IMG/VR virus record: IMGVR_UViG_3300009034_000001
Span: 124,001 to 188,000 of that record
Strand: one strand, 5' to 3'
Length of the DNA: 64,000 bases
The first letter of the stretch is position 1; every line of letters starts with the position of its first letter. Below, piece by piece: positions 3,914 to 63,547 of this stretch. A program made the position numbers and the translations under genes. The notes beneath the pieces are model-generated. The model made no database searches and was not told where the DNA came from. It worked only from the letters and a program-made list of their open reading frames with translations.

Positions 3914-6343
3914 TCATTCTACGATAGACGTATGGAACCCTTTATAACCTTCAGCAAGCTCTATAAGCCGTTTGTTCACTAAGTAATTCACGGTGCCTTT
4001 GGGATAGGTATTATCCTTCCGTTGTGTGCCAGCAGACAATCCAGTCAAGATTTCAATACCTTCATTGATCGAATTTATCTTATAAATATGAAATTGGCCT
4101 TTTTTAACGGCTTGTGTCACATCCTCACGAAGCATCAAATTCCTTATATTCCGTGCCGGAATTAAAACGCCTTGTTCTCCCGTCAGACCTTTTTCTTTAC
4201 ATACATCAAAGAATCCTTCGATCTTTTGATTTACACCACCAATTGGCTGAATTTCACCTTGTTGGTTAACCGAGCCGGTCACGGCTATATACTGCTTAAT
4301 TGGAATATCGGCAAGGCTTGACAGTACGGCGTAAAGTTCAGTAGAAGAGGCACTATCCCCATCTACGCCAGTATAAGTTTGTTCAAAGCAAAGACTTGCT
4401 GTAAGAGACAAAGGCTTATCTTGTGCAAATTTCGATCCCAAGTAGCCAGATAAGATAAGCACGCCTTTATCATGAATTCGTCCGCTGAGTTTTGACTCTC
4501 TTTCAATATTAATCACACCACGTTTACCCAAGAAGGTTTTTGCTGTAATGCGTGAAGGGAAACCGAAACTAAATATTCCAAAGTCATAAACAGCTAATCC
4601 GTTAACCTGTCCAACAACTGACCCTTCAACATCAACCATAAGTGTTCCTTCGGAAATTAGTTGCCGGATATTCTCAGCTACAAGATCAAGTCGATGAATC
4701 TTCTTTTTAACAGCCATATCAACATGTGTTCCAGTAATCATTCGGCTTTCAGACTTCTTTGCCCAGTAGTCCGCCTCAATTGCCAAATCTTTCAACTGTC
4801 CAAAACGAGAAGATAACTTCTCCTGGTCACTTACCGCTCTTGAAGCATATTCCATAACCTTAGCAACACCTGCGCGGTCAAAGGGCAGTAACTTTTCACT
4901 GTCGCAACACTTTCGCAGAAACTGCGCATAACACACCAAATTTTCATCAGTTCGCTTGACTTTGTTGTTAAAATCAGCCTTTACCTTAAACATTTCCCAG
5001 AAATCTTCTTCATACAACGCCAGGAGTTGATAGATACGCTCCTCCCCGGTCATTACTATTTTGACGTTTAAAGGCACGGGCTGCGGTCTGATCCCTTGTG
5101 GAACAAGGAAACCAAATTGTTCAAGAGGGTCTTCAAGTCTAACTTCCTTTGTTTTGATAGCCCTCTTAAGTCCATCCCAAACTCCAGGACTAAACAAAAC
5201 ATCGCGTACGTTAAGAATTAAGTACCCACCGTTGGCCAATTGAAGGGATCCTGGTTTAATCATTGTGTGATCACTTATATAAGCGCCCATTACAGCCTTC
5301 CTTTCAATTTTGCCAAACATATTAAACCAACTGGGATTAGATTCAATAACTATTGGTGGCCCTTGAGAACAACTATTATCTACAAGCACATTCACCTTGA
5401 AGACAATAAACGGATCTGTTTGTATTGGAAAGGTAACTTCTTGTGAACTGTTTTTTGTTGGCTTGAAAAATAGTTGCAATTTTGTGAGTACAAATTCTTT
5501 AACCTCGTTTAAGAAATTTCTCACTTCCAGATATTCGCCATAGACTTCAAACAATTCAGTAAAAGGTCCAGTTATTACAAATTCGGCCACTCTTTTGCCC
5601 ATCTTGTTCAACTTAATGTCCGCCTCTTTTTCGAGACCGCTTACTAGTCTAGCGGTTGCATCAACCTTTTTCATCATCAGCCTTCGCTTTGTTTCAATGG
5701 CTTCCCTTTCTTCATCCTTTAGGCTTAAGAAATCCTCTCTGGATAAAGGCTTGCCGTCAGCCAAAGGAACTACTGTTGAGCCAGACATCGAAAGTTCAAC
5801 CATTAAGCCATCCTTCTTTGCTTCCATATCTAAAACGTGCAGTACTTCGCGATATTCCTTCTGTTTAGCTTCCAAAATTTCCTGCTTACGGTTCTGGACT
5901 TCTTCACTAGTAAAAGCCTTGGGTATTTCCACTTGCAAAGTCTTTAGAAGCCATTCCATATGATTCTTAAAGGACTTACCACACCCCTTTGATAATTTTA
6001 AAATCCGGGGCCGATCCGGATCGGTAAAGTTGTGTACGTAGCACCAATCACAGGGCTGAAAATTTATACCATGCGACCGTTTATCATTAACAAATTTTTC
6101 CACGCAAGACTTGATAGTGGTAGCCTTTCCGGTTCCAGTAAGTCCAGTTAGAAAGAGGTTATAACCCTGACTGTCAACATCTAGTCCAAAGTTAATGGAA
6201 TCTAATGCACGCTCTTGGCCAATAAATTCTTTAAGTGGCTCTAGGTTCGAGGTATCCTTGAACTTGAAATGTGTGGACGGACATCTCCATCGTAGTTCCT
6301 TAAGGGGAACTTTAAATTTTTTAAGCCTAATTTTATTTGACAT
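3914..6343 (-). CDS. Lon-family (LonC/YcbZ-type, peptidase S16) AAA protease
   Basis: IGQERA, GLTGTGKAT, ANGGYLIL, VDGDSASSTE catalytic Ser, QPIGGVNQKIEGFF. Confidence 0.9.
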   Translation of the reverse strand: MSNKIRLKKFKVPLKELRWRCPSTHFKFKDTSNLEPLKEFIGQERALDSINFGLDVDSQGYNLFLTGLTGTGKATTIKSCVEKFVNDKRSHGINFQPCDWCYVHNFTDPDRPRILKLSKGCGKSFKNHMEWLLKTLQVEIPKAFTSEEVQNRKQEILEAKQKEYREVLHVLDMEAKKDGLMVELSMSGSTVVPLADGKPLSREDFLSLKDEEREAIETKRRLMMKKVDATARLVSGLEKEADIKLNKMGKRVAEFVITGPFTELFEVYGEYLEVRNFLNEVKEFVLTKLQLFFKPTKNSSQEVTFPIQTDPFIVFKVNVLVDNSCSQGPPIVIESNPSWFNMFGKIERKAVMGAYISDHTMIKPGSLQLANGGYLILNVRDVLFSPGVWDGLKRAIKTKEVRLEDPLEQFGFLVPQGIRPQPVPLNVKIVMTGEERIYQLLALYEEDFWEMFKVKADFNNKVKRTDENLVCYAQFLRKCCDSEKLLPFDRAGVAKVMEYASRAVSDQEKLSSRFGQLKDLAIEADYWAKKSESRMITGTHVDMAVKKKIHRLDLVAENIRQLISEGTLMVDVEGSVVGQVNGLAVYDFGIFSFGFPSRITAKTFLGKRGVINIERESKLSGRIHDKGVLILSGYLGSKFAQDKPLSLTASLCFEQTYTGVDGDSASSTELYAVLSSLADIPIKQYIAVTGSVNQQGEIQPIGGVNQKIEGFFDVCKEKGLTGEQGVLIPARNIRNLMLREDVTQAVKKGQFHIYKINSINEGIEILTGLSAGTQRKDNTYPKGTVNYLVNKRLIELAEGYKGFHTSIVE

Positions 6344-6354
6344 CCTCTTTCCTC

Positions 6355-7080
6355 CTATTTCTCTTCACCTTCAAAATAACCGTCAATGGCCGAACGACAC
6401 TTTGAAAACTCTGGAGCCGCTGACGAACGCCAACCAAAGTGTTGGTAAACAAAGATGCCGTTCTTCCACTCGTTGGACAACTTCGACCAATTAACCCCTT
6501 TACCGTATAACATTTCGTGTATATCCGACTGATTCTTATTCATTAACTCATTATGCGAAAAGTGTGACTGAGCTAACATATGTATACTGTTACGTTCCCA
6601 ATCCTTCTGACGCCAAATGAAGTAGTTACAAACTTCTTCCTTTGGGATATTAAATACTCTACAATCAAACAGGGCTAATTGGGGAGGCAAAACCACACCA
6701 TACCCATCAATGAAGAAATTTTTCGTAAATGTTACAGAAGCAATACTAGCTGCGATAGAAGTCATCTTTTGAATGTTATAATCAAACCAAGCTGAGGTAT
6801 TTAACTTATCAAAATCCGAAATCAAGATCGAAATTTCATCGGATTGGACATATGCACATTTTGAACCTTGGATTTCACTACACAACGCAATTGCGGTCTT
6901 TTTCATACAATCCGAAAAGATGTTATCAAACGGTTTTTCACATCTTCGTGTCAGGGTATGAAATGCTTTCCCATCCAGTCTCATAATAACAGGCGTTCTG
7001 CGACATAGTTTAATCCTGTAACGATTTTCGTAGTTCTCCTTCATTCTATCGCCTATCGACTGAGTCATGAGGTCCTCCAA
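6355..7080 (-). CDS. Thg1-like tRNA(His) guanylyltransferase / 3'-5' polymerase
   Basis: RLDGKAFH, YVQSDEIS, FDCRVF, NYFIWRQKD..RNS. Confidence 0.92.
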   Translation of the reverse strand: MEDLMTQSIGDRMKENYENRYRIKLCRRTPVIMRLDGKAFHTLTRRCEKPFDNIFSDCMKKTAIALCSEIQGSKCAYVQSDEISILISDFDKLNTSAWFDYNIQKMTSIAASIASVTFTKNFFIDGYGVVLPPQLALFDCRVFNIPKEEVCNYFIWRQKDWERNSIHMLAQSHFSHNELMNKNQSDIHEMLYGKGVNWSKLSNEWKNGIFVYQHFGWRSSAAPEFSKCRSAIDGYFEGEEK

Positions 7081-9040: not shown

Positions 9041-9982
9041 CTACCTCCTTGGTTTGTGCCGCATAAATGTTTCAATAGTAGCCACAATACTACGCGGTGT
9101 TAAATTATATTTCTTTAATAACGATTCTGGAGAACCCGAGCGAGTAAATATATCAGGAATACCAATACGTAACATTGAAACAAGTTTGTGTTCCATTAAA
9201 CATTCTGACACAGCATCACCTAAACCGCCAATTACTGAATGATCCTCGACGGTAACTACCGAGCCAGTACTTCCAGCACAATGCAACAATAATTCAGTAT
9301 CCAATGGTTTAACTGTTGACATAGCAACAATACTACTGGAAACACCAGACATTTGAAGATAGTTTGCAACTTGTAAACATGTATGAGTTAAATAACCTGT
9401 TGTCACAATTGTGACATCTTTACCGTCACGCAAACAGCTACCCTTCCCAATTTCAAAATGGTTACGCTTTTCAACAATCTCTGGCATATCAATTCTACAA
9501 CCTCTAATATACACCGGGCCTGGATGTGCTACAACAGTTTCAACAACCTGTTCCATTTCGGTGCTATCTATTGGAGCAATCACGGTCATATTTGGTATTA
9601 CTCGCATTAATGCAAGATCTTCCAACGCGTGGTGTGATACACCGTCGGGTCCAACGGTTATTCCGCCATGGCTACCAAAGATTTTTACATTCAAGTTGTC
9701 CAACGCAATTGTTTGTCTTATTTGTTCCCATCCCCTACAAACAAAGATTGCAAAGGTAGCCAGGAAAACAATCTTACCAGTTAGTGCAAGTCCCGCAGCT
9801 ACGGACATCATATTTTGTTCTTGTACCCCAACGTTAAAAAACCGATCCGGGAAAGTCTTCGCAAAGTAATGGGTCTTTGTTGATGATGAAAGGTCAGCAT
9901 CGAGCACGACAACGTCTTTATTTAATGTACCTACTTCTTGTAGTTTCTTTCCGAAAGCATCTCGCGGATTACGCTTTTCCAT
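9041..9982 (-). CDS. transketolase, C-terminal (pyrimidine-binding) subunit
   Basis: LDADLSSST, RFFNVGVQEQNM, GPDGVSHH, TVEDHSVIGGLG. Confidence 0.93.
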   Translation of the reverse strand: MEKRNPRDAFGKKLQEVGTLNKDVVVLDADLSSSTKTHYFAKTFPDRFFNVGVQEQNMMSVAAGLALTGKIVFLATFAIFVCRGWEQIRQTIALDNLNVKIFGSHGGITVGPDGVSHHALEDLALMRVIPNMTVIAPIDSTEMEQVVETVVAHPGPVYIRGCRIDMPEIVEKRNHFEIGKGSCLRDGKDVTIVTTGYLTHTCLQVANYLQMSGVSSSIVAMSTVKPLDTELLLHCAGSTGSVVTVEDHSVIGGLGDAVSECLMEHKLVSMLRIGIPDIFTRSGSPESLLKKYNLTPRSIVATIETFMRHKPRR

Positions 9983-10823
9983 TTAACTCCTCCAACGCTT
10001 TAATATACTCTGCATACGTAGGTGCAACCCCATGATACTTTACTCGATTTTCCATAAAAGAAACGCCTTTACCTTTGACGGTCTTTGCAATAACGCACAA
10101 TGGTCTGTGATGAGTTCGTGGGTATTGAAGTACGCGTTTTAACTGAACAAAGTCGTGTCCATCAACTGAAAACGTTTCCCAACCAAAGGATTGAAACTTG
10201 AGATAAAGTGGATAGATATTCATAACATCAGTAATACGCCCGTCTATCTGGAGGTCGTTATTATCCACAATAACAACAAGATTATCAAGTTCATAGTGAC
10301 TCGCACACATAGCGGCCTCCCAAATTTGTCCAGACTGTAACTCGCCATCACCAGTTACTACAAACACTCTGTTCGGATCCTGATTGAGTTTAAGTCCTAG
10401 TGCAATTCCAACGCCAACTGATAGCCCTTGTCCAAGTGAGCCAGTAGAAACTTCAATACCTGGAGTAAACTTCCTCCTTGGATGCCCTTGAAGCTGGCCA
10501 AAAATTGTCCTTAACTCTAACAAATCCTTAATTGGAAAATAACCTAATCTAGCAAGGATAGAATAAAGCGTTGGACAACCATGACCCTTCGATAATATAA
10601 AATAATCGTGCGGAACATTTACATCAGTTGCAGACAACGGAGGTAAACTCATTACATGACAGAAGAGTGTAGCTAGTATTTCTACACAGGATAATGCGCC
10701 GCCCGTGTGTCCAGAGCCTGCAACACACAACATAGTAAGTACATCTTCCCTTATCCTCTTGACCAGTTTCGGAAATGGCAAAGTACGGAATGTTTCACTA
10801 CTACTAATTATATCTATTGCCAT
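9969..10823 (-). CDS. transketolase, N-terminal (ThDP-binding) subunit
   Basis: SGHTGG, LSKGH, LQGHP, TGSLGQG, GDGELQSG..WEA, TVKGKG. Confidence 0.93.
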   Translation of the reverse strand: MAIDIISSSETFRTLPFPKLVKRIREDVLTMLCVAGSGHTGGALSCVEILATLFCHVMSLPPLSATDVNVPHDYFILSKGHGCPTLYSILARLGYFPIKDLLELRTIFGQLQGHPRRKFTPGIEVSTGSLGQGLSVGVGIALGLKLNQDPNRVFVVTGDGELQSGQIWEAAMCASHYELDNLVVIVDNNDLQIDGRITDVMNIYPLYLKFQSFGWETFSVDGHDFVQLKRVLQYPRTHHRPLCVIAKTVKGKGVSFMENRVKYHGVAPTYAEYIKALEELNGKA

Positions 10824-17606: not shown

Positions 17607-18635
17607 TTATTTTGCAAAGTTGTCATATTTCCTCAAAACGGAATCATCCATCAGATGATTTAAAACGAGATCCGAAACACTTTTTATACGCTTGTTTGAC
17701 CACCTTAGATAAGTTCCCAGTTTAAGTACAAACTCCTTTCCAAGAGCTTCGTGATGCACGTAGGTACTTCTATCAAGTTTATGAACCCGCACAAACGGTT
17801 TTGCAATGTCATGGAGCAATAAAGCCCACGCTACCTCAATATCCAACGAATCGCATACTGAAGAATAAGCATCAAGCGCAGTTAAAGTATGTTCCCATAA
17901 ATCACGGTTGTGCCATTTGTTATTCTGATCGTAATCTACTTGAACTGAGAGTTCAGGTAAAATATAATTGAGTACTTCAGTTCTATCCAAGAAACTTAAT
18001 CCTCTTGAAGGTTTATAACTCAGTAACAATTTGTCAATTTCTCCAACCCAACGTTCCTTACTAACACCCAATATCTTATAATTCACTTTTTTTGCACAAT
18101 CTTCCGTCTTAGCATCAACATGAAAGCCAAGTTGTGAAGCAAAACGTGCAGCTCTTAACAGTCTCAATGGATCCTCGCGAAAACGAGACGTGGGATTACC
18201 TACAGCACGAATTAATTGCTTTTCAATATCTCGACTACCACCAAAGGGGTCTATATACCTATTACCTCTTTTAGCAATTGCGTTCATAGTGAAATCTCTT
18301 CTACTAAGGTCAGCCGTGATATTATTAACAAATTCAACTTGAGGTTTACGAGATCCAGTAATATACTTCTCTTTTCGGAACGTAGTTATTTCCACCATCC
18401 TTCCATCTACCTTCACTCCCAAAGTTCCAAATTTCTTGCCAACTAAATATGGCCTTCTTTGAGCCTTTCTAATACGGTTTTCAATTTCATCCGGAGGCAG
18501 AGGTGTAGTGAAATCGTAATCCTTCGGATCAACACCCATCAGCTCATCCCTAACGGAACCACCTACGAGATAGACAGGACAAACCAAGCCTTCAACGTAT
18601 TTAACAATCTCTTTATGTGTCATCCTCTTTGCCAC
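17607..18635 (-). CDS. CCA-adding enzyme / poly(A) polymerase family NTase with HD domain
   Basis: VGGSVRD, DYDFTT, RRDFTMNA, EDPLRLLRAARF, LLHDIAKP. Confidence 0.9.
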   Translation of the reverse strand: MAKRMTHKEIVKYVEGLVCPVYLVGGSVRDELMGVDPKDYDFTTPLPPDEIENRIRKAQRRPYLVGKKFGTLGVKVDGRMVEITTFRKEKYITGSRKPQVEFVNNITADLSRRDFTMNAIAKRGNRYIDPFGGSRDIEKQLIRAVGNPTSRFREDPLRLLRAARFASQLGFHVDAKTEDCAKKVNYKILGVSKERWVGEIDKLLLSYKPSRGLSFLDRTEVLNYILPELSVQVDYDQNNKWHNRDLWEHTLTALDAYSSVCDSLDIEVAWALLLHDIAKPFVRVHKLDRSTYVHHEALGKEFVLKLGTYLRWSNKRIKSVSDLVLNHLMDDSVLRKYDNFAK

Positions 18636-19526: not shown

Positions 19527-20576
19527 TCACCTCATTTGAACAAATTTGTGTATCTGAGTACCAAGGATGACGTCCTTACCTTTCCAAAAGTTAGACATCA
19601 AAATATCCGCAACGTTACTCAATCGTTTAAGGTATTCATTAACATCAAACGGGACCGGAGACACTGGAGACAAAACAAAGGCTGCGGTTGACATTTTTTC
19701 TACTACATACTTTGCAAACTCTAGATCTTCAATGCCGTCCAGAAGTAACTTGAACTGAACGAAAGGCCGAGGATGTTGTGGATCAAAGAAATGCTGTCTT
19801 TGGTCTAGCCAGAAACGTTTGTAAATCTTCATGGGAACGTCCAAATTGTTTTTAACCTTTGAACTCGGTCCTTTTATATCTACGGAAATCAAGCCATTCA
19901 CCAAGTCAAACACCTCAGGGTTCCAAATTGTGCCATTGGTTTGTAGCATTATTTGGCAACCAAATCGACGTAACATATTTATCAAATACTTAGCGGCTGA
20001 AGGTTGATGTAGCACCTCACCGCCAGTAAGGAAAATCACACTATTTCTTAACGGACTATATTCATCATGTGCGTTAACACAATGAACTTCATCAAGTAAC
20101 CGACGAATCGACCAATTCTGACCTTTTCCCCAACTATACTTTGTGTCGCAATATGGACACTGGAGGTTACACCCCGAAAATCTAATAAATGTAGCAGGGG
20201 TTCCCACCTCATGTCCTTCGCCACAAACGGACCGGAACACATCTTCAGCAAGCCTTACTGGAACCGTTCTTTCAAACCAAGCTTGTGGCAAATCATTCAA
20301 ATCTTCTTCATACAAACCTAAATACTCTATCTTATGAGAACGGTAACTGTTTACCGCGTCAACAAAATATTTAAAGTATCCAGGAATGTCAAATCCGCCA
20401 AAATATTCAATAAAAAGTTGTGGGTGTTTAATATAACAATCCGGACTGATTATACCATCAGGTTGTGGATAGCAATTCTCAAAATCCAAACCCAAATCGT
20501 GGAAAAAGTAAATAATCTTGTCAATTTGATTAGCAAACATATCTTGGAATTTTATTTCGATCTTTTTTCCAGTCAT
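19527..20576 (-). CDS. queE: QueE 7-carboxy-7-deazaguanine synthase (radical SAM) with ~100-aa N-terminal PD-(D/E)XK-like domain
   Basis: FRSVCGEG..GTPATFIRFSGCNLQCPYCDT, TGGE, QTNG, QIHK. Confidence 0.85.
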   Translation of the reverse strand: MTGKKIEIKFQDMFANQIDKIIYFFHDLGLDFENCYPQPDGIISPDCYIKHPQLFIEYFGGFDIPGYFKYFVDAVNSYRSHKIEYLGLYEEDLNDLPQAWFERTVPVRLAEDVFRSVCGEGHEVGTPATFIRFSGCNLQCPYCDTKYSWGKGQNWSIRRLLDEVHCVNAHDEYSPLRNSVIFLTGGEVLHQPSAAKYLINMLRRFGCQIMLQTNGTIWNPEVFDLVNGLISVDIKGPSSKVKNNLDVPMKIYKRFWLDQRQHFFDPQHPRPFVQFKLLLDGIEDLEFAKYVVEKMSTAAFVLSPVSPVPFDVNEYLKRLSNVADILMSNFWKGKDVILGTQIHKFVQMR

Positions 20577-21588: not shown

Positions 21589-22170
21589 TTAAAGTAAATC
21601 AAATTTGTTAATATACCTATACCATTTATTCCGAGGTGTTATTGGATACAATAACGACGTTCGTCTATCCCGTTTGCCAACTGGAAGCAAATACGTAGGC
21701 ACAATAACATTCAGAGTCAAACTTTTATCTTGTAAAATAAAAATGGTAATGTTACTGTCATACCGCGCGACATACGGACAAAATTTGTAACCTCTAGGAT
21801 CTAATTGTACCTTTGAAGCCAAAAGTCTTACAATTTTATCATTAACACGAATGTAGCTACCACGCGAGACTCTCGTAACCACAAATCCTTTCCTTTTTAG
21901 AAGTTGTGTAAATTCCTCCTTTGCACGTGAAAACCAACACTTGCCCCACGAGAAAGTCTTACACCTATTTACTACTCTTTCGCGTTTCTGACTTAAACCT
22001 AACTTATCAATAACTTGTCGAGCGTACTCCCTTGTAAAACCAAAGTATCTACCAATATCTGCCTTAGAACACAGTGGATCGTGATACATCCGCATAAACT
22101 GTTGCATAGCGCCGGGACCATAAAGTTCCTCAAATTTATCCTTAAAAGTTTGGCTCCTTCGCCTTCGCAT
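21589..22170 (-). CDS. HTH-containing basic DNA-binding protein
   Basis: KADIGRYFGFTREYARQ resembles a sigma region 4 type HTH. Confidence 0.45.
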   Translation of the reverse strand: MRRRRSQTFKDKFEELYGPGAMQQFMRMYHDPLCSKADIGRYFGFTREYARQVIDKLGLSQKRERVVNRCKTFSWGKCWFSRAKEEFTQLLKRKGFVVTRVSRGSYIRVNDKIVRLLASKVQLDPRGYKFCPYVARYDSNITIFILQDKSLTLNVIVPTYLLPVGKRDRRTSLLYPITPRNKWYRYINKFDLL

Positions 22171-23227
22171 TGTACGCCTCCTTCAGTTCGTTCAAACTAA
22201 TTACCCCCTTTTTATACGCTTCCCACTTTAGCCAGAAGAAGTAGGTGTAACACACATGATCTCGCAACTCCTCCGATCCAAATTCAAACATGTCATCCTT
22301 AAGGAAATGTGCTGAATCAAACTTTCTCAAACCAGCTCGCAGTCCATCAATACAAAAGTTCATAAATTCCTTAAACCTTTTCTCATCAAAAGAGTTCAAG
22401 CCTTCGTATTTACTATCCCTATCAAACAAGCTAACCAACTGTGCAAATGGAATACGAAGAAGGTTAGGTCTATTCTTGAAAACCCAGATAAGTCCTGGCA
22501 TGTACCGCATTTGAACACAATATTCAGGGAAAAGTGGACTTTCCCGTGGATCTTTATCATAAGTCGTTTTATCTTCCCCAAGCGCAGACAACATTGCAAC
22601 GTTGCGCTCAACACATAAATAACATTGGCCACAATGTAACTTATATGGAATACTTCTACCCTTTATTGTACCTCTATCATAGTAAAAACAGCTGTTCGTT
22701 TCATATATCAAATCGCCAACTTGGTCATGACACAGTTTAACACGATCACACTTTATGGTTGCATTTCCAATGTCATCCAACGTCCAAAGTTTGCACTGAG
22801 GATCTTTCCCATGAATGTAGTTCTGTAACTCTTCAGTATTGCTGTCTTTTGTTGACACCGACCACCAATTTACCCAAGTTTCTGGCCCACCACCTTTATA
22901 CTCGCCCATTCCAATGTCAGCACCCGGGAACCGTTCCAATGTCCAATCAATCATATACTGATTCCTTTTAGGTAGCATATCTCGCGTCATCATGTATTTC
23001 CGATCTGAAAAAATAAGCGGTTTCGGAATATCAAAACCTTCCTTAGTGCACTTATTCCATAAGTTCATAACGGTTCGAACTTCGCGTACACAATAGCCTT
23101 CACCTTTCCACCTAACGTATATTGGCTGTGGTTTAATTAATCCAAGAGTCTGATTGCAACGAGCAAGCCAAGTCAACACGGCCAGTGAATCCAATCCGCC
23201 TGAAAATAGCACAATAGCTTTTTTCAA
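22142..23227 (-). CDS. queC: QueC-like PP-loop ATPase (7-cyano-7-deazaguanine synthase family) with C-terminal extension
   Basis: KKAIVLFSGGLDS, PKRN, TNSCF, HCGQCYLCVER zinc site. Confidence 0.75.
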   Translation of the reverse strand: MKKAIVLFSGGLDSLAVLTWLARCNQTLGLIKPQPIYVRWKGEGYCVREVRTVMNLWNKCTKEGFDIPKPLIFSDRKYMMTRDMLPKRNQYMIDWTLERFPGADIGMGEYKGGGPETWVNWWSVSTKDSNTEELQNYIHGKDPQCKLWTLDDIGNATIKCDRVKLCHDQVGDLIYETNSCFYYDRGTIKGRSIPYKLHCGQCYLCVERNVAMLSALGEDKTTYDKDPRESPLFPEYCVQMRYMPGLIWVFKNRPNLLRIPFAQLVSLFDRDSKYEGLNSFDEKRFKEFMNFCIDGLRAGLRKFDSAHFLKDDMFEFGSEELRDHVCYTYFFWLKWEAYKKGVISLNELKEAYNAKAKEPNF

Positions 23228-27078: not shown

Positions 27079-28293
27079 CTATATAACCCTTTTAAGCCTT
27101 ATTGTGTTAAAGTTATACTTCCTTCCCTTCTTGGCACAATTAATCCACATTCCAAGTGACCTTTGAACAATATCCGCGGTAAAGTCAAACTTGCCATCAA
27201 ACATAGACGAGCCAACACCATAAGCATAAACCGGCAAATCTAACCTTTCAAATTTGGAAATCTTCTCCGGCGTAAATCCGCCACTAACTACAATCTTAAT
27301 ATCACTAAAGAATTGACGTCCTACGCTCCCTACCTTAAAGTCCAAAGACCTGTTTCGTAATGCTAAAAAAACATTTTTTACCAATTGTGGGTTGACTCCA
27401 GTTATTTCATGTAAATTATGCGGCACAAATGTACCTTCATCATCTATAGAATCCAACACCGACTTATCCACCATCGTTCCAGATGTATCTAGTCTTACAC
27501 CAAACAGTTTGTATCGTGGATCTCTTGTTTCCTGATATTTTAACCACATTGCATTTGCAACATCCAAAGATGTCTTTACGGAATCGTTGTCAAAATCAAC
27601 AAGCACAACTCTCTTTACCATTGGATCAATAAATTGACAAAACTTAAGTGTAGCCGTTACTGTATCTCCGCCATAGGCAGCAATTAATCCATGAGGCATC
27701 GTTCCAATGCCTTTTTCTCCCCACCACCAACCTTGGGCGTCAGTCGACACGCCTCCGCATAATGGCAGACCAGCAGCTTCTCTGCCAACAGAATAAGAGT
27801 ACCCATCTTTAGGCTGTACAGTATAACTATCAAATCTGGCAGGAAAGAAAAGAATTGGTTTACCCTTCGCAGCTTTCACGCACCTATAAACATTAGTTGC
27901 AACCTTAGTACCTCTCGCTAAAGTGCCCAAGTATACAGTCTCAAGATGTGCAAACAGTGAATAATCGCCCTCAATTAACATTACCGTTTCCCAAGCGTTT
28001 ATAATATCGCCATCACGTAAAGACCTAATCGTAAGCTTTTCAAAACTTGTGTTTAAAATTTGTTTCATTATATGAATTGACTCATCAATGCCACACAAGC
28101 ATGCGTTATTATTCTTCTGGAAAATCTGAATCCTGACAATGGGACGATGATGATCCCACTCCAAAATTCGTTTGGTATTGTTGAAGTATTCGTCGGTGTA
28201 GCTTCCAAACTTTATCACAGGTTCAACTTTTACACGATTACAATTTAATTTCATATTCCTTACCCTTTTTATCTGGTTTGTAGGTTGTCTCAC
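27079..28293 (-). CDS. nicotinate (or nicotinamide) phosphoribosyltransferase family
   Basis: YTDEYF, GTMPHG, LVDFDND, GVRLDTSG, VSGGF, YGVGS. Confidence 0.85.
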   Translation of the reverse strand: MRQPTNQIKRVRNMKLNCNRVKVEPVIKFGSYTDEYFNNTKRILEWDHHRPIVRIQIFQKNNNACLCGIDESIHIMKQILNTSFEKLTIRSLRDGDIINAWETVMLIEGDYSLFAHLETVYLGTLARGTKVATNVYRCVKAAKGKPILFFPARFDSYTVQPKDGYSYSVGREAAGLPLCGGVSTDAQGWWWGEKGIGTMPHGLIAAYGGDTVTATLKFCQFIDPMVKRVVLVDFDNDSVKTSLDVANAMWLKYQETRDPRYKLFGVRLDTSGTMVDKSVLDSIDDEGTFVPHNLHEITGVNPQLVKNVFLALRNRSLDFKVGSVGRQFFSDIKIVVSGGFTPEKISKFERLDLPVYAYGVGSSMFDGKFDFTADIVQRSLGMWINCAKKGRKYNFNTIRLKRVI

Positions 28294-31484: not shown

Positions 31485-32399
31485 CTAAACGCCTAAATCA
31501 ATCTTGTAAGAATCCACTGTCTTTTGTAGACCATCTTTAAACGGGCTTGGTAAATACCCAAGAATATTCTTTGAATTTGTAATATCAAAACTGACATCTC
31601 TAATGTCACCAAGCCTTTGTTGAACATGTCGAGCTTCCATAGATGCGCCGGTAATTTGTTTTAAATAACTAAAGAGTTCATTTACAGTATGTGACCGGCC
31701 ACTTCCAATGGGAAAGGATTTGCCACAAACAAGTTGCTTTGGTACAAAAGCAGCTAACACGTTTGCAGTAACAACATCTTCAACATAAACAAAGTCCCTA
31801 GTTTGTTCTCCATCACCATAAATTTCAACTGGCTCGCCAGTTAAAAGCGCCCTAGTAAATTTCGGCACTACGGCAGCATATTCTAAATGTGGATTCTGCC
31901 TTGGTCCAAACACATTTGAATAACGCAGTGAAACGGTTTCCAGGCCATACAATTCATAGAAAAGTCTCAAATAATGTTCGCAAGTCAGTTTTGTTACTCC
32001 ATATGGCGACGCAGGCTTAAAGTTGTTGTTGGCACCGTAAACCGAGCCCGAGGATGCAAAAATAAAACGTTTCACGTCAAATTCTCGAGATGCTATCAAC
32101 ATATTCAAAGTGCCCAATACGTTATTTGCATGACTTTCTATTGGATTATCGACGGAACGTTTTACAGAACCAATTGCAGCAAGATGTAACACAAAGTCCA
32201 TTCCATAGCACATAAAACGACAGGCCTCAAGGTCTTTAATGTCGCCACGCCAAAACCGAGCTTTCGAATTTACATTTTCAATTTTTCCATTGGATAGATT
32301 ATCCAAAACGGCAACAAGTTGGCTATTATCGCACAAATAGTCCACAAGGTGTGAGCCAATAAAGCCCGCTCCACCAGTCACTAGCCACTTATATTTCAT
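31485..32399 (-). CDS. NAD-dependent NDP-sugar epimerase/dehydratase (extended SDR)
   Basis: TGGAGFIGSH, HLAA, ASSGSVYG, YGVTK, NVFGPRQ, GDGEQTRDFVYV. Confidence 0.92.
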   Translation of the reverse strand: MKYKWLVTGGAGFIGSHLVDYLCDNSQLVAVLDNLSNGKIENVNSKARFWRGDIKDLEACRFMCYGMDFVLHLAAIGSVKRSVDNPIESHANNVLGTLNMLIASREFDVKRFIFASSGSVYGANNNFKPASPYGVTKLTCEHYLRLFYELYGLETVSLRYSNVFGPRQNPHLEYAAVVPKFTRALLTGEPVEIYGDGEQTRDFVYVEDVVTANVLAAFVPKQLVCGKSFPIGSGRSHTVNELFSYLKQITGASMEARHVQQRLGDIRDVSFDITNSKNILGYLPSPFKDGLQKTVDSYKIDLGV

Positions 32400-37959: not shown

Positions 37960-38475
37960 TTAAACTCTATTCAACCAGCCTTTTAAATACTTTGTAAGCT
38001 CTGGCCTACGTTCAGATAGCTTGATATATCTGACAACTTCCTCACAACGATATATCTTAAGTAAGGCTTTAGACCAACCATCCTCAATAAGCAAATTCAA
38101 ATTGTACAATGTTTTAGGGCCAATATCTCCATCCAGCATCAAATACGCTGGTTCCCCAAGTACCATAGTAAGTTTATTTACTGTACGTTGTAAGGTAACG
38201 GATGCTGTCTTTACGCCTACGTTCACAGCATAATCCAAAATTTCTGTTGCTAAATCCTGATCCTCAATGTAAACACCTTTTATTGGACACCAGTAATCGC
38301 AGTCATAAATTTCAGTTGCTTCATCCTTGGTTAAACTTTTAATGTCAACAGCTGGATGTGCACGTTTAGAGATTCCATATTTTGTTTCTCCACCCGGATC
38401 GTCGGGATCATTTACATATCCGCCTTCATGTTCAAAGATTACAGGCATTGCTTTCTCTAGTCTGGCCATAAACAT
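37960..38475 (-). CDS. endolysin, glycoside hydrolase family 108
   Basis: HEGGYVNDPDDPGGETKYGIS, DGDIGPKT, GWLNRV. Confidence 0.92.
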   Translation of the reverse strand: MFMARLEKAMPVIFEHEGGYVNDPDDPGGETKYGISKRAHPAVDIKSLTKDEATEIYDCDYWCPIKGVYIEDQDLATEILDYAVNVGVKTASVTLQRTVNKLTMVLGEPAYLMLDGDIGPKTLYNLNLLIEDGWSKALLKIYRCEEVVRYIKLSERRPELTKYLKGWLNRV

Positions 38476-39135
38476 TTACCTCCTGAAGTCTTTGTGTTTC
38501 AACTTAGTTACTATACGTTTACCCGACCGAGCTTTTAATTCAACCAATGGCTTCAACACAAGTCCCTCAGCAAGAAAGTCGCCAAAGCTCGATTTAAGTC
38601 CACGTTTAACAGTCATTATAGCATCATCAATAGTTCCTATGCTAAGGATTTGGACAATATCAATTCCAAGCTTCGTTGCAATATCTACCATATTTCCCCT
38701 TTCAAGCCACCAATCATTAATTAATATGTCAAATAGTATGAAACTCTGTCCATCGCGTATGTAATTGCCCCCTTTCTGAATTCCGGCGCCATAACCTTCG
38801 CCATACAAAGTCACGTCCTGCATTCCAAACATTTTCTTAAACTTTTCAACAGGGAACATTTTATTAAGTACCTCTAGCAATAGTGGGGGCATATTCGCAT
38901 TATCGGTTTTTCCTCTAAACGAAACTTTATCCGCATCGTTAATTTCAATCCCGTTGTTTGCAACGGTTCTGTAAATTACCCTGATGTTCATTCCGTCAAT
39001 TTTCTCGGTCCCAACCCAGAAGTTATCCTTCAAGTATTGAAATTCAGGCCGAGTCCAATCACCTTCGATGAAGTAATTTGGTTTCTGTGACATATCGCGT
39101 TTGAAGATACTTTGAATTTTAGGATACTCCTTCAC
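38476..39135 (-). CDS. RNA ligase (Rnl2-like adenylation domain)
   Basis: TEKIDGMN, YGEGYG, FILFDI, AEGLVLKP, TKLK. Confidence 0.85.
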   Translation of the reverse strand: MKEYPKIQSIFKRDMSQKPNYFIEGDWTRPEFQYLKDNFWVGTEKIDGMNIRVIYRTVANNGIEINDADKVSFRGKTDNANMPPLLLEVLNKMFPVEKFKKMFGMQDVTLYGEGYGAGIQKGGNYIRDGQSFILFDILINDWWLERGNMVDIATKLGIDIVQILSIGTIDDAIMTVKRGLKSSFGDFLAEGLVLKPLVELKARSGKRIVTKLKHKDFRR

Positions 39136-39766
39136 TTGCGTAACCCCCTATATACAAAGTATTATTGTCATTATTACAATTACGCCAACAACCAGGCTCA
39201 TTAAAAGGAAGACCTTATCATCCTGATCAGCTATTTTCTCTTTTTCCAATGCCTCCTCGTATGTAATGTCTCCTTTTTGCCATTTATCCCTAATTTCCTT
39301 TCTCATTTTCTAACTCCCTCATCACTACACGTCAATCTTCTTCAGAATTATCCTCGTCCTCTTCAAGTATTGACTTCTTATACTCTTCAGTACAAATCAC
39401 ACAGCCACGACTGCCATAGTCATGATAATACTCATCAATACTAGTATCAACCTTCTCGCCTTTATTCACCTGCTCTACCGCATGATTAAAGCATAATGAG
39501 CCATACTTCTTTGTTGAAAAGACCACCTCCCACGGACTACTCATACCTTAGCCTCCTCAAATGCTTGCTTAACATCTGTTATGCACTTCCTGACTGACTT
39601 TTCAGCTCTAACCCAAAACTTTAGTTTCTTTTCAAGATATACAAGATCACAATCTTTATCGCAATGTTCATCTTTAATCTGGTCAGTTATCGATACCTGA
39701 GATATCAATATTCGTGTCAATACTTCCTGTAAGTCGTAAAAAATTCCGCCCATAACTATTATCCTC

Positions 39767-40003
39767 CTACACCACGGAAACGTAGCCGTTTGAAAATTTA
39801 ACTGTGCCTCGTTTCTTAGCAAATAGTGTAAAATCTCTTCCAACACCGACGTTGGAACCCAGCTTTATTTTTGTGCCAACTTGTCTCACCAAAATTGTTC
39901 CTACGTTTACAAGTTGGCCATCTCCTCGTCTCACGCCTCTACGCTTTCCCCGCGTATGACACCCTTGATGGGCTCTACTGCCGCCAGCTTTCTTGTGTGC
40001 CAT
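39767..40003 (-). CDS. rpmA: 50S ribosomal protein bL27
   Basis: MAHKKAGGS...KRRGV...[11 protein letters not shown]...[18 protein letters not shown]. Confidence 0.95.
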
Positions 40004-40005
40004 TG

Positions 40006-40527
40006 TTACTCCTGTAACATAAGCGTGTTCTGGCCTAACAATTTAAAATGTTCTGGTTTGAATGTTGCAAAGAAGTCAACTGAACTACACAACCACCAAT
40101 TGGTATCTAAAAGTATGAAAGGTTTGTCCCAAAGTATGTTAGAAAGCCGCTGAGATAATTCAATAAACTCGAACTTCATGCCGATGTAGGGTTTTCGGTT
40201 ATCACGTTTAATCACCAATATTGGTATCCGGTTGGTTTCCCTAGCGTCACGTTCACATTGTGCAGCATATTCAAGGAATCTAACATTTTTGTTATGGTCC
40301 AAAAGTTTTAGTATATCAAATTCTTTCGGCGCTTTCAACTCAATATTAAAATGATCAATTAATGGTAAACCAAGTTTATAGTGAGGATGATTAAGATTAA
40401 CCGTAACGTCCCCTTGGTGGGACTGACCAGGAATGCGTTTAAAGATACCTGTGTATTGTCCATTTGTCCACCAACGACTCAACGACTTTTTCGGCCACTC
40501 TCTTTCAAAACTTTTCCACGATTTCAT
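40006..40527 (-). CDS. PD-(D/E)XK Holliday junction resolvase-like protein
   Basis: [18 protein letters not shown]. Confidence 0.6.
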
Positions 40528-42269: not shown

Positions 42270-42680
42270 TTAACCAAAAGTAGCCCAATTGGTTGGAGTT
42301 TCGTACACTGTAACCTCCTTAACAATAAGAGACTGTGTATTTAACTGACTTGATAGAATGTTATAGATATATCTCGACATAACTTCTGCTGTTGGCTGAT
42401 CCTCTGGTAATAAAACAACTTCATTGCCAAGATTATATAAATGTCGAAACAGCTCATCATCGGAAGACGATAAAATTGTAGCATGATCAAACTTTTCAAG
42501 GATCTTCTTTAATTCCATTTTCAAAATACCAAAATCAATAACCATTCCCTGATTCAAAGTACCTTTACAAACCGTTGCAATAACCTTATAAGTGTGGCCA
42601 TGAAGATTCTTGCATTTACCGTCGTATTCCGGTAATCGATGTGCAGCGTCAAAAGTCATCTCAATACTAACGCAATACAT
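42270..42680 (-). CDS. queD: QueD 6-carboxy-5,6,7,8-tetrahydropterin synthase
   Basis: FDAAHRL, CKNLHGHTY, MVIDF, FDH, PTAE, VYETP. Confidence 0.93.
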   Translation of the reverse strand: MYCVSIEMTFDAAHRLPEYDGKCKNLHGHTYKVIATVCKGTLNQGMVIDFGILKMELKKILEKFDHATILSSSDDELFRHLYNLGNEVVLLPEDQPTAEVMSRYIYNILSSQLNTQSLIVKEVTVYETPTNWATFG

Positions 42681-45636: not shown

Positions 45637-45714
45637 TGGTCTGGAAGGGAGGATTTGAACCTCCAACAACCTGGCTCCAAACCAGGGGCTCTATCCAGAC
45701 TGAGCTACTTCCAG
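45637..45714 (-). tRNA. tRNA-Pro(UGG), encoded CCA, A37/G38
   Basis: CTGGAAG...CCTGG-TTTGGAG-CCAGG...GGTTCAAATCC...CTTCCAGACCA; C1:G72 and A73. Confidence 0.93.
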
Positions 45715-46218: not shown

Positions 46219-47208
46219 TTACCTAAAGAAACAAAACCGTTCTAATTCAAATTCACTTTCTGACATTAACTTGCGGTAAATTTGAGCAGCACAGAAAATG
46301 TCTTGAATAGCCAACCCGGTTGAATCAAATACTGTTATTGTATCTAATGAAGGAATAACCGACTTCCTACCGGTAACAATTTCGCCAATATCCGCGTATA
46401 TATATGTTATATCAATTAAGCCTTTTGCAAGAGGCACATTAATTTCTCCACTTATTGATGCCTGTTCCCGATCATCAACAACTACCGTAGCAACATCAAG
46501 AATTGAGATATCTAATTCACGTTTGCCGGGTGCATCCGCGCCAATTGCGTTAATATGCATTCCATTCCGCAACCACTCCAGTCTAACTATTGGAATTAAA
46601 GACGGCGTTGTTGTAATAACGACATCAGCCACACGTAAAGTGTCTTGAACTGTAGAAGAAAGTTCACCTTTTATACCAAATTTGAAATGTGCCCATTGTA
46701 AAAACGTCACAGTATTTTTCTCATTAATATCCCAAGCAGTAACTTTCTCAATTCCAGGTCTGACAACCAACAAAGCTTCTAGTTGCGTCCTTGCTTGGAC
46801 TCCCGCGCCAATAAAAGCGGCTACCTTTGAATCTTTGCGAGCAAGATACTTCACTGCAACACCACCCGCAGCTCCAGTTCGCATGTTTGTAATATGTGTT
46901 CCATCCATAATTGCGATTGGAAAGCCAGTCTCCGGATCAAATAATGTTATAGTTGCCATTACTGTAGGCAAACGTTCATTCCGAGGATGAACACTCACAT
47001 TCTTTACGCCTGCAAGGTTGACCGATGGAATATAAGCAGGCATACAACGTAAGTCGCCTTTTAAAAATTGTAAATAAACCTTGGGCGGAGCTTGCACTTG
47101 ACCCCGGCCAAATTGTTTAAATACGCTTTCCACGGCATCTATATATTCCGGCATACTAAAAGCCTTTTCAATTTGGGAACGCGTAATTATATAGGTTGTC
47201 TTGTTCAT
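46219..47208 (-). CDS. ornithine cyclodeaminase / mu-crystallin family (archaeal-type alanine dehydrogenase-like)
   Basis: PPKVYL..GDLRCMPAY, RTGAAG, GAGVQA, INAIGADAPGKRE, FDSTGLAIQD. Confidence 0.9.
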   Translation of the reverse strand: MNKTTYIITRSQIEKAFSMPEYIDAVESVFKQFGRGQVQAPPKVYLQFLKGDLRCMPAYIPSVNLAGVKNVSVHPRNERLPTVMATITLFDPETGFPIAIMDGTHITNMRTGAAGGVAVKYLARKDSKVAAFIGAGVQARTQLEALLVVRPGIEKVTAWDINEKNTVTFLQWAHFKFGIKGELSSTVQDTLRVADVVITTTPSLIPIVRLEWLRNGMHINAIGADAPGKRELDISILDVATVVVDDREQASISGEINVPLAKGLIDITYIYADIGEIVTGRKSVIPSLDTITVFDSTGLAIQDIFCAAQIYRKLMSESEFELERFCFFR

Positions 47209-63073: not shown

Positions 63074-63547
63074 CTAATCATATTCTTTCTTTAATACAGC
63101 CTCAACTTCAAGCATGAAAGTCTCATTGATGTTGTAGTACTTTGTATCAAAAAGATCCAAACCATCAAGATACGAATCGTCATAACACTCCTGATCGGTA
63201 TCATAACGTTGAAATCGACTTGCTTTTTTGTGCTCCTTAAGGATATCTTCAACCCCTTCTAATATCTGAAGTACATCATTGAAGGTTGTTGTTTTACCGT
63301 CATAATTTGTTAAAAACAACTTTATATCATCCAACGCAATACTGTAACCATTATCAAACCACTGCGCGAAACCGCCATTCTCAACCTGATAGTTTAAATT
63401 TCCCAAGATTACAGCATTGTAATGTGCTGGGCTAAACTTTTCGTGTATCTCATCAAGGAATTGACTATAAGAGCAACGACCCTTTTTAGATTTCCAAAAG
63501 TCATAGGCCTCATCCATCAGTTTTTGATGTATATCGCACTTTTCCAT
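63074..63547 (-). CDS. DUF4375/DMP19-like acidic protein (possible DNA mimic)
   Basis: YQVENGGFAQWFDNGY; D/E-rich. Confidence 0.7.
   Translation of the reverse strand: MEKCDIHQKLMDEAYDFWKSKKGRCSYSQFLDEIHEKFSPAHYNAVILGNLNYQVENGGFAQWFDNGYSIALDDIKLFLTNYDGKTTTFNDVLQILEGVEDILKEHKKASRFQRYDTDQECYDDSYLDGLDLFDTKYYNINETFMLEVEAVLKKEYD

What the first reader, a model, noticed from the sequence alone, without database searches (positions are those of the whole stretch)
39767..40003. Phage-encoded ribosomal protein bL27 with remodelled N-terminal tail
Seen: intact bL27 between an RNA ligase and a resolvase-like gene, without its usual chromosomal neighbour rplU. After MAHKKAGGS it reads [14 protein letters not shown] instead of the canonical TRNGRDSxxKRLG. 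Established: the bL27 N-terminus reaches the peptidyl transferase centre and contacts tRNA; the commonly reported viral ribosomal proteins are bS21 and bL12. Inference: the phage may swap a PTC-proximal protein into host ribosomes to alter translation or counter a defence.
Basis: partly seen in the sequence, partly recalled or inferred. Interest (0 to 1): 0.8.

Follow-up and report, generated by a model that had tools for sequence, protein, structure and literature searches.

The report
Jumbo phage carries a lone bL27 gene
A large tailed phage from a sediment metagenome carries one intact gene for ribosomal protein bL27, a protein next to the ribosome's catalytic centre not yet securely documented in a virus, but its odd N-terminal linker matches the bL27 of Patescibacteria (CPR) bacteria and is not a phage invention.

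Summary
Window 39767-40003 (-) is an intact 78-aa ORF that is clearly bL27 (Pfam PF01016 85.8 bits; model body pLDDT about 90; all top Foldseek hits are ribosomal bL27).

The contig is a real tailed phage. A large terminase (PHROG 38, E=7e-51) and a portal-like protein lie about 59 kb away on the same contig and strand. The neighbours are phage-type, no rplU is present, and the gene's codon usage matches the phage's.

The "remodelled tail" reading is only partly right. Residues 1-9, the tip that reaches the peptidyl transferase centre, are canonical. Only the linker (residues 10-23, one residue longer) differs. That linker type (S-[KR]-A-x-Q-G...G-K-R-x-G) occurs in cellular bL27 genes next to rplU. 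In 185,579 GTDB species the motif hit almost only Patescibacteria (WWE3, Woykebacteria and relatives). The globular body alone cannot resolve the donor.

Most likely this is a host-type bL27 captured from a Patescibacteria-like bacterium and kept to supply 50S subunits during infection. That function is inferred, not shown.

Two pattern scans of 2.9 million IMG/VR contigs found bL27 only on this phage's own two contigs. The bL27 genes checked in GenBank "phage" records sit in cellular rplU-rpmA contexts. Novelty: new member of a known kind.

The parts
39767..40003 (-). Phage rpmA-like gene: bL27, 78 aa, including the TAG stop.
   Evidence: ORF, Pfam, TIGR00062. AlphaFold body pLDDT about 90, and all 50 top Foldseek PDB hits are bL27 chains, TM about 0.7.
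39977..40003 (-). Codons 1-9, MAHKKAGGS: the PTC-reaching tip, which is canonical.
   Evidence: each residue is the majority residue across 311 bL27s. PMC13450312 describes the AHKKAGG tip and the hinge at Gly8.
39935..39976 (-). Codons 10-23, [14 protein letters not shown]: the linker, one residue longer than canonical and of the Patescibacteria type.
   Evidence: The closest linker is SKAHQGCDVKGKRRG in P0125/P0271 (10 of 15 identical).
39770..39934 (-). Codons 24-78: the beta-sandwich body. All near-invariant residues are kept. It deviates at K25R, A34V and P48L and has a short C-terminal loop.
40009..40013 (-). Shine-Dalgarno-like AGGAG, 5 nt before the ATG, inside the 3' end of the upstream gene.
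   Evidence: the upstream sequence reads CAGGAGTAACAATG. The upstream gene's TAA stop ends 2 nt before the ATG.
40006..40527 (-). Upstream gene: phage PDDEXK_15 nuclease (PHROG 244, annotated 'RusA-like resolvase').
39541..39753 (-). Downstream 70-aa ORF of unknown function. Its ATG lies 13 nt after the bL27 stop and is preceded by GGAGGA.
   Evidence: The 101-aa GTG-start ORF 39541-39846 is an over-extension.
39332..39544 (-). 70-aa ORF of unknown function in the same tightly packed gene run.
38476..39135 (-). RNA ligase, Rnl2-like. JGI aa; the ORF list gives 219 aa from a GTG start.
37960..38475 (-). Endolysin: GH108 domain plus PG_binding_3.

Best explanation
A jumbo tailed phage (contigs of 241 kb and 173 kb, no close cultured relative) carries one orphan copy of the bacterial ribosomal protein gene rpmA. 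The copy was captured from a bacterium whose bL27 has the Patescibacteria/CPR-type linker, which is probably the host lineage, and it was cut out of the rplU-rpmA operon. It now sits as one cistron in a tightly packed, same-strand run of phage genes, has its own Shine-Dalgarno site, and has taken on the phage's codon usage. The PTC-reaching tip and every near-invariant residue of the RNA-binding body are kept. The most likely function is therefore the ordinary one: the protein is made during infection and enters host 50S subunits as a host-compatible bL27. This would keep ribosome maturation and elongation going, and, following the 2026 result on bL27, keep tmRNA-SmpB off translating ribosomes while host gene expression is shut down or under attack. 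Shown here: gene identity, fold, viral context, linker type and its taxonomic distribution. Inferred: donor equals host, expression, incorporation into ribosomes, and any benefit.
For: Identity. Virality: all genes on one strand with uniform GC of about 0.385. TerL matches PHROG 38 at E=7e-51 next to a 1233-aa portal-like protein, with an HNH endonuclease, primase and SSB nearby. DnaB, UDG-PolA and RecA are also on the contig. An endolysin lies in the window, and the surroundings are dense small ORFans. TerL matches 1658 phage records at 27% identity or less. Not chimeric: the two assemblies are identical over 20 kb. A 207-bp, 100%-identical contig from another sediment run bridges the bL27 3' end into the next gene. 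GC3 is 0.392 against 0.350 +/- 0.034 for phage genes, and a CAI-like index is 0.732 against 0.754 +/- 0.022. Linker origin: the pattern HKKxGGSxAxQ hit 48 loci among GTDB species. 42 of these are full bL27 genes, nearly all labelled Patescibacteria (WWE3, Woykebacteria, 'Saccharibacteria' MAGs), and 41 of the 42 have rplU directly upstream. The best-scoring relatives among 5.8 billion proteins (P0002, P0003) carry this linker, and P0003 and P0271 lie in rplU-rpmA contexts. In full-length trees the canonical bL27s form a starred clan (98/95 and 97/93) that excludes the phage protein. Its sister is the AHQGC-linker group P0125/P0271/P0310. TIGR00062 scores group the phage protein (77) with linker-variant cellular bL27s (79-83), not with canonical ones (120-132). 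Conservation. Functional role of bL27: PMC13450312.
Against: With the tail columns removed, the 54-residue body gives no resolved placement, and its highest identities (69%) are to canonical-linker bL27s. The AU test merely fails to reject the variant clade (p=0.126). The donor call therefore rests mainly on the linker: one indel plus a motif. No independent host evidence was obtained. The phage RecA has no close or named relatives, and the transketolase look-alikes are mostly Bacillota. bL27 is not among the readily exchangeable ribosomal proteins that Mizuno et al. found enriched in viruses (PMC6375957), so replacement in mature ribosomes is not a given. No sister allele exists, so purifying selection could not be measured. 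Expression was not tested.
Confidence: 0.55

Rival explanations
1. One reading: the phage itself remodelled the PTC-proximal tail of bL27 so as to change peptidyl-transferase or tRNA behaviour, or to evade a host defence that targets bL27.
For: Within the Patescibacteria-type linker the phage copy has substitutions of its own. Against the subfamily consensus S-K-A-R-Q-G-G-N-V-A-G-K-R-L-G it reads [15 protein letters not shown]. It also has K25R and P48L at positions conserved in 99% and 81% of bL27s.
Against: The tip that actually reaches the PTC (residues 1-9) is unchanged. The linker length and motif are shared with cellular bL27 genes in rplU-rpmA operons. The AHQGC stretch itself occurs in cellular P0125/P0271/P0310. 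The TIGR00062 score equals that of cellular variants.
Confidence: 0.1
2. The gene is a neutral passenger, or the very basic protein has been put to a non-ribosomal use, for example nucleic-acid binding or acting as a decoy for a host factor.
For: It is a singleton: no second phage lineage carries it, so there is no evidence of long-term retention across phages. Its neighbours are nucleic-acid enzymes (PDDEXK nuclease, RNA ligase) and not translation factors.
Against: The ORF is intact, has a strong Shine-Dalgarno site and is tightly coupled to its neighbours. All near-invariant rRNA-binding residues are kept despite at least 32% divergence from every known bL27. Codon usage is ameliorated, which implies long residence without decay.
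Confidence: 0.15
3. The locus is cellular DNA or an assembly chimera, as is argued for the PhiMa05/MaAM05 record.
For: Most bL27 matches in GenBank 'phage' records are short unannotated records or other doubtful entries. The two that were inspected, MaAM05 and 'Acinetobacter phage MD-2021a', sit in rplU-rpmA housekeeping contexts. PMC13623518 argues that PhiMa05 is not viral. The two contigs here come from one sample and are not independent.
Against: TerL and a portal-like gene lie on the same contig and strand. About 100 kb was inspected and holds no rplU and no other ribosomal or core cellular operon. Composition is uniform and GC3 is phage-like. A contig from another run bridges one junction. 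The gene lies more than 10 kb from the end of the 173-kb contig and more than 70 kb from either end of the 241-kb contig.
Confidence: 0.03

Closest known systems
Cellular bL27 (rpmA) of Patescibacteria/CPR bacteria (WWE3, Woykebacteria and related MAGs; metagenomic P0002, P0003, P0125/P0271, P0288, P0296)
   Same: Same family and fold. Same canonical MAHKKAGGS tip. Same one-residue-longer linker with S-[KR]-A-x-Q-G...G-K-R-x-G. Same sub-threshold TIGR00062 score (77 against 79-83). Up to 68% identity.
   Different: Not preceded by rplU, whereas 41 of 42 cellular loci are. It lies in a phage genome. It has a shorter C-terminal loop and is 78 aa long. Its own substitutions are H12, C15, H16, T17, R18, K25R, A34V and P48L. 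The body phylogeny is unresolved.
Virus-encoded ribosomal proteins: bS21, bL12, bL9, bL31, bL33 and others (Mizuno et al. 2019, PMC6375957); S1, S4, S21 and L7/L12 in huge phages (Al-Shayeb et al. 2020, PMC7162821)
   Same: A single ribosomal protein gene taken out of its operon and carried by a phage, here a jumbo phage that also carries tRNAs and tRNA-maturation or repair genes.
   Different: bL27 does not appear in the main text or held supplements of Mizuno et al. as a viral protein, nor in the Al-Shayeb list. It lies next to the PTC and is not one of the loosely bound, exchangeable proteins those authors found enriched in viruses.
bL27 of 'Microcystis phage PhiMa05/MaAM05' (MW495066; Meza-Padilla et al. 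2026, PMC13157829)
   Same: A bL27 gene annotated in a record deposited as a jumbo phage.
   Different: There rpmA follows rplU and rpsA among ispH, ruvA, ispD and thiL, which is a cellular operon context. A published comment argues that the record is not an intact phage (PMC13623518). Here the gene is orphan, flanked by phage genes, and on a contig with a terminase and a portal.
Firmicutes bL27 with an N-terminal propeptide cleaved by the Prp protease
   Same: Another lineage-specific variation at the bL27 N-terminus.
   Different: The phage protein starts directly at MAHKK with no extension. No Prp-like gene was seen among the annotated neighbours.

Membership tests
Bacterial ribosomal protein bL27 (rpmA) | Matches Pfam PF01016 above the gathering score. 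| tested here: met
   85.8 bits against 20.5, E=2e-24.
Bacterial ribosomal protein bL27 (rpmA) | Reaches the NCBIfam TIGR00062 equivalog cut-off. | tested here: not met
   77.0 bits against a cut-off of 90.35. Bona fide cellular bL27s with the same linker type also fail (79-83 bits), while canonical ones score 120-132. The cut-off therefore excludes the whole subfamily, not this protein in particular.
Bacterial ribosomal protein bL27 (rpmA) | Conserved N-terminal AHKKxGG tip. | tested here: met
   MAHKKAGGS: every residue is the majority residue in 311 bL27s.
Bacterial ribosomal protein bL27 (rpmA) | bL27 beta-sandwich fold with a flexible N-terminal tail. | tested here: met
   AlphaFold mean pLDDT is 83. 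Ten-residue blocks from residue 21 on average 89-96, and residues 1-20 average about 55. All 50 top Foldseek PDB hits are bL27 chains, TM 0.69-0.75.
Bacterial ribosomal protein bL27 (rpmA) | Near-invariant body residues are kept (G23, G29, G35, I37, R40, Q41, G43, G49, N51, V52, G53, G55, D57, T59, F61, A62, G66, V68). | tested here: met
   The deviations are only K25R, A34V and P48L.
Bacterial ribosomal protein bL27 (rpmA) | Lies in an rplU-rpmA operon. | tested here: not met
   No L21-like ORF in the 64-kb window at E<=10. This is expected for a captured gene.
Bacterial ribosomal protein bL27 (rpmA) | Is a component of the 50S subunit. | not testable with these tools
   Needs biochemistry or cryo-EM.
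Patescibacteria-type bL27 linker subfamily | 25 instead of 24 residues from M1 to the G-[VIL]-[KR] motif, with S-[KR]-A-x-Q after GG. | tested here: met
Patescibacteria-type bL27 linker subfamily | The globular body groups with the subfamily when the linker columns are left out. | tested here: inconclusive
   Tail-free trees are unresolved. AU test p=0.126, not rejected.
Virus-encoded ribosomal protein (auxiliary gene of a phage) | The contig carries viral hallmark genes. | tested here: met
   TerL matches PHROG 38 at E=7e-51, and a portal-like protein matches PHROG 12 at 1e-8. An endolysin is present. The major capsid protein was not recognised.
Virus-encoded ribosomal protein (auxiliary gene of a phage) | Flanked on both sides by viral or ORFan genes, away from contig ends, and not an assembly artefact. 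| tested here: met
Virus-encoded ribosomal protein (auxiliary gene of a phage) | Under purifying selection, or conserved among related viruses. | tested here: inconclusive
   It is a singleton cluster. No second viral copy was found in two pattern scans of IMG/VR or among 5.8 billion proteins.

The most novel reading that the evidence does not exclude
This is a roughly 240-kb jumbo phage of a Patescibacteria (CPR) bacterium, whose own genome would be only about 1 Mb. It carries a host-type copy of the PTC-adjacent protein bL27 to finish or protect the host's few, reduced ribosomes during infection. That would make it the first secure case of a virus encoding a protein of the ribosome's catalytic neighbourhood, and a ribosomal-protein marker for CPR phage-host links.
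Probability: 0.3. Interest if true: 0.8.

Novelty: new member of a known kind. Interest (0 to 1): 0.6.

Why it matters
Virus-encoded ribosomal proteins are known, but they are mostly peripheral, exchangeable ones such as bS21 and bL12. The only published claim of a viral bL27 (PhiMa05) is disputed because that record looks cellular. Here bL27 is a lone gene among phage genes on a contig with a terminase and a portal. It is therefore a clean test case for whether phages can supply a late-assembling protein next to the PTC. The lineage-specific linker also offers a host clue that points to Patescibacteria, for which very few phage links exist. It also flags a bL27 subfamily that NCBI's equivalog model under-scores.

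Tried and rejected
- Megablast of 20 kb of the window against GenBank phages found no match. PolA and TerL have only distant phage relatives, at most 28% identity.
- No PHROG family matched the bL27.
- Promoter and terminator scans around the gene were not above shuffled expectation.
- The RNA fold of the leader was unremarkable, z = -1.8. Rfam found only the two tRNAs and no ribosomal-protein leader.
- Host inference failed. The RecA homologue search gave nothing close or named, and the ESM Atlas look-alikes of the transketolase were uninformative.
- A metagenome-contig scan for the AHQGC-type tail returned nothing. It did not even return the source contig, so that collection does not hold this sample.
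- Cluster look-ups gave no taxon names for the variant-linker proteins.
- Tail-free phylogenies were unresolved.
- The major capsid protein was not recognised by PHROGs among candidate ORFs downstream of the portal gene.
- One contig look-up failed because the gene starts with TTG.
- A literature search for the sample identifier found nothing.
- Rejected: a Prp-type propeptide (none is present), and a real 101-aa gene overlapping the bL27 3' end (the true start is the ATG at 39753).

Full report
**1. The observation**

Window 39767-40003 on the minus strand is an uninterrupted 78-codon ORF with an ATG start and a TAG stop. JGI's own gene call on the source contigs is the same.

Several results identify it as bL27:
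- It matches Pfam Ribosomal_L27 at 85.8 bits, with a gathering score of 20.5 and E=2e-24.
- It aligns end to end with solved bL27 chains; the best PDB hit has E=9e-18.
- An AlphaFold model built on a 58-sequence alignment has mean pLDDT 83. Ten-residue blocks from residue 21 on average 89-96, and the first 20 residues average about 55, as expected for a tail that is ordered only on the ribosome.
- All 50 best Foldseek matches in the PDB are bL27 chains of ribosome structures, with TM 0.69-0.75.

**2. Is the contig a phage?**

The window is positions 124001-188000 of IMG/VR UViG 3300009034_000001, which is JGI Ga0115863_1000006 at 241,415 bp. A second contig of the same sample, Ga0115863_1000017 at 173,109 bp, is identical over the 20 kb compared.

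Every sizeable ORF in the window is on the minus strand. GC is a flat 0.37-0.41 and GC skew is uniformly negative.

Walking along the 173-kb contig downstream of the window's low-coordinate end gave these genes:
- a DnaB helicase, a primase, GTP cyclohydrolase FolE2, dUTPase and MazG;
- a UDG-PolA fusion, an SSB and RecA;
- then a large terminase (PHROG 38, E=7e-51, 436 residues aligned), followed by a 1233-aa protein with a portal-like N-terminus (PHROG 12, E=1e-8) and an HNH endonuclease.

The terminase is about 59 kb from the bL27 gene, on the same contig and strand. It matches 1658 phage records, none above 27% identity. The polymerase likewise has only distant phage relatives.

The window itself holds a GH108 endolysin, an Rnl2-like RNA ligase, a 'phage PDDEXK' nuclease and long runs of 40-150-aa ORFans. 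About 100 kb of the contig was inspected through precomputed Pfam calls, and no rplU or other ribosomal or core cellular operon was seen.

I could not recognise the capsid protein. I conclude this is a genuine, deeply novel tailed jumbo phage.

**3. Is the bL27 gene part of that phage?**

- The stop codon of the upstream nuclease gene ends 2 nt before the bL27 ATG.
- An AGGAG lies 5 nt upstream of the ATG.
- The next gene starts 13 nt after the bL27 stop, behind GGAGGA.
- Overall GC of the gene is high (0.473), but that reflects its Gly/Arg/Ala-rich composition. Third-position GC is 0.392 against 0.350 +/- 0.034 for 65 phage ORFs, and a CAI-like index is 0.732 against 0.754 +/- 0.022. Codon usage is therefore the phage's.
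- Low-depth contigs from sediment metagenome runs released in 2024 are 100% identical to parts of the region. One 207-bp piece (39632-39838) bridges the 3' end of bL27 into the downstream gene. The piece at the 5' junction has only 16 nt inside bL27 and does not count as bridging. Whether these runs are independent of the source sample is unknown.

A chimera or cellular contaminant is very unlikely.

**4. The 'remodelled tail'**

Residues 1-9 are canonical. Each is the majority residue in an alignment of 311 bL27s. They include the AHKKAGG tip whose mutation or truncation is what matters in the 2026 study of bL27 and tmRNA-SmpB, and the Gly8 hinge (PMC13450312).

What differs is the linker, residues 10-23, which is one residue longer than usual. 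Among 270 retrieved bL27s, 230 have 24 residues up to the G-[VIL]-[KR] motif and 10 have 25. Those with 25 share the motif S-[KR]-A-x-Q-G/K...G-K-R-x-G with the phage protein.

The two best-scoring relatives among 5.8 billion proteins (P0002 and P0003, 64-66% identity) have this linker. P0003 lies directly downstream of an L21 gene.

The closest linker of all is SKAHQGCDVKGKRRG in P0125/P0271, with 10 of 15 residues identical including the Cys. It lies in an rplU-rpmA-rpoB context.

A degenerate DNA pattern for HKKxGGSxAxQ, scanned over one genome for each of 185,579 GTDB species, hit 48 loci:
- 42 are complete bL27 genes. Nearly all are labelled WWE3, Woykebacteria, 'Saccharibacteria' or 'Patescibacteria group'.
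- The few labelled Gammaproteobacteria or Nanoarchaeia cluster inside the Woykebacteria-type clade in the tree, so they look like mislabelled MAGs.
- In 41 of the 42, rplU sits directly upstream, with a gap of -8 to 96 nt.

A profile search then found some thirty more such proteins, with up to 68% identity to the phage copy. That is as high as the best canonical bL27.

NCBI's equivalog model scores the phage protein at 77.0 bits, the cellular linker variants at 79-83, and canonical bL27s at 120-132, with a cut-off of 90.35. The sub-threshold score is thus a trait of the subfamily and not a sign of decay.

The linker is therefore an inherited, cellular, Patescibacteria-type feature and not a phage innovation.

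**5. Phylogeny and its limits**

In two full-length maximum-likelihood trees (121 and 112 rows), the canonical-linker bL27s form one side of a strongly supported branch (98/95 and 97/93) that excludes the phage protein. In the second tree its sister is the P0125/P0271/P0310 group, with weak support of 74/65.

With the first 24 columns removed, only 64-65 columns remain and the placement dissolves:
- The nearest rows by path are canonical in both tail-free trees.
- In the second tree the sister is a Patescibacteria group, with negligible support.
- Body identity peaks at 69% with canonical sequences, against 61% for linker variants.
- An AU test on tail-free columns does not reject a phage-plus-variant clade, p=0.126.

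The canonical set was chosen as the best of about 7,700 hits to the query, which biases it towards similarity. The honest statement is that the linker (one indel plus a motif) assigns the gene to the Patescibacteria-type subfamily, and the body neither confirms nor contradicts this.

**6. How rare is this?**

- Two scans of the 2.9 million IMG/VR contigs, one with exact peptides of the query and one with degenerate patterns from an alignment, confirmed bL27 only on this phage's own two contigs. The patterns do not cover every bL27 variant.
- Its 90% cluster has one member, and the next relative is at most 68% identical.
- tblastn against 50,697 GenBank phage records gave 15 hits, many of them short unannotated records.
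- The two large annotated records I inspected, 'Acinetobacter phage MD-2021a' and Microcystis phage MaAM05 (PhiMa05), carry rpmA right after rplU among housekeeping genes. These are ispB, lolA and serS in the first, and rpsA, ispH, ruvA, ispD and thiL in the second.
- PhiMa05 is the only published claim of a viral bL27 (PMC13157829). A 2026 comment argues the record is not an intact phage (PMC13623518).
- Mizuno et al. list 14 viral ribosomal proteins. bL27 is not in the main text or held supplements as a viral protein. Al-Shayeb et al. list S1, S4, S21 and L7/L12 for huge phages.

**7. Mechanism**

Shown here:
- an intact, translatable bL27 with a canonical tip;
- a host-lineage-type linker;
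- a fully conserved RNA-binding body, apart from K25R, A34V, P48L and a short C-terminal loop;
- placement in a tight phage gene run.

Inferred: the protein is made during infection and occupies the bL27 site of host 50S subunits.

From general knowledge, not tested here, bL27 joins late in 50S assembly, and its loss cripples growth. PMC13450312 reports that it keeps tmRNA-SmpB from interfering with elongation. A phage that shuts down host expression, or whose mRNAs are cut by defence nucleases, could gain from keeping bL27 supplied.

The same genome carries the following genes, so translation upkeep is a theme:
- two tRNAs;
- a CCA-adding enzyme;
- a Thg1-like enzyme;
- an RNA ligase;
- Lon-like and ClpP proteases.

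A host-type linker would be needed if the linker's rRNA contacts have co-varied in Patescibacteria. That is testable but was not tested here. By analogy with the use of phage rpS21 trees to confirm host phylum (PMC7162821), the linker suggests a Patescibacteria host. No second line of host evidence was obtained.

**8. Verdict**

- The 'phage-encoded bL27' reading is supported.
- The 'remodelled tail' reading is corrected: it is an inherited Patescibacteria-type linker with a canonical tip.
- The function is unproven.
- This is a new member of the known class of virus-encoded ribosomal proteins. It is arguably the first securely viral bL27, and it carries an intriguing but unconfirmed pointer to a CPR host.

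Noticed in passing
window 766-842 (-) and 45637-45714 (-): Two phage tRNA genes, tRNA-Ala(TGC) and tRNA-Pro(TGG). ARAGORN and Rfam agree.
   Followed up: partly
window 17607-18635 (-), 6355-6984 (-), 38476-39135 (-), about 55.1-55.7 kb (-): A tRNA maturation and repair set: a CCA-adding enzyme with an HD domain (PHROG 2244, E=4e-73), a Thg1-like protein, an Rnl2-like RNA ligase, and a weak Rit1_C-like hit. It suggests defence against tRNA-cleaving host systems.
   Followed up: partly
window 42270-42680 (-), 19527-20576 (-), 22142-23227 (-); L057:11240-12043: 7-deazaguanine (preQ0) pathway genes: QueD/PTPS, a QueE-like radical SAM enzyme, a protein with a QueC-like N-terminus, and FolE2 just outside the window. 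This may be DNA or tRNA modification. No transglycosylase was looked for.
   Followed up: no
window 3914-6343 (-) and 1921-2655 (-): The phage encodes an 809-aa LonB/LonC-like AAA protease and a ClpP.
   Followed up: no
window 9041-9982 (-) and 9969-10823 (-): A split transketolase (separate N- and C-terminal subunit genes) in a phage. The Atlas model has pTM 0.95, and the nearest clusters are mostly Bacillota.
   Followed up: partly
window 27079-28293 (-), 31485-32399 (-), 46219-47208 (-): Other metabolic passengers: a protein with a QRPTase_N domain, an NAD-dependent epimerase/dehydratase, and an ornithine cyclodeaminase/mu-crystallin homologue.
   Followed up: no
window 63074-63547 (-): A 157-aa protein hits PF14300 (DMP19, a DNA-mimic protein family), with a YAcAr-domain protein about 1 kb further on, just past the window's high end. 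These are possible anti-restriction or host-takeover genes in a region of tiny ORFans.
   Followed up: no
window 39541-39846 (-) and + strand ORFs 39804-40153: The mechanical ORF list shows a 101-aa GTG ORF overlapping the bL27 3' end, and several + strand ORFs across the gene. The real downstream gene starts at the ATG at 39753, and the + strand ORFs have no support.
   Followed up: yes
L058:13887-17588 (source contig, outside the window): A 1233-aa protein whose N-terminus is portal-like. It also gives weak hits further along to a second portal family and to a head-maturation protease family. It may be a portal fusion.
   Followed up: no
P0125/P0271/P0310 (L059): A cellular bL27 lineage in an rplU-rpmA-rpoB context. 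Its tip reads MAHTT or MAHKT instead of MAHKK, so the otherwise 96-98% conserved lysines next to the PTC are replaced. Its taxon is unknown.
   Followed up: partly
TIGR00062 against Patescibacteria-type bL27: NCBI's bL27 equivalog model scores genuine rplU-linked, linker-variant bL27s at 79-83 bits, below its 90.35 cut-off. This subfamily may therefore go unnamed in automated annotation.
   Followed up: yes
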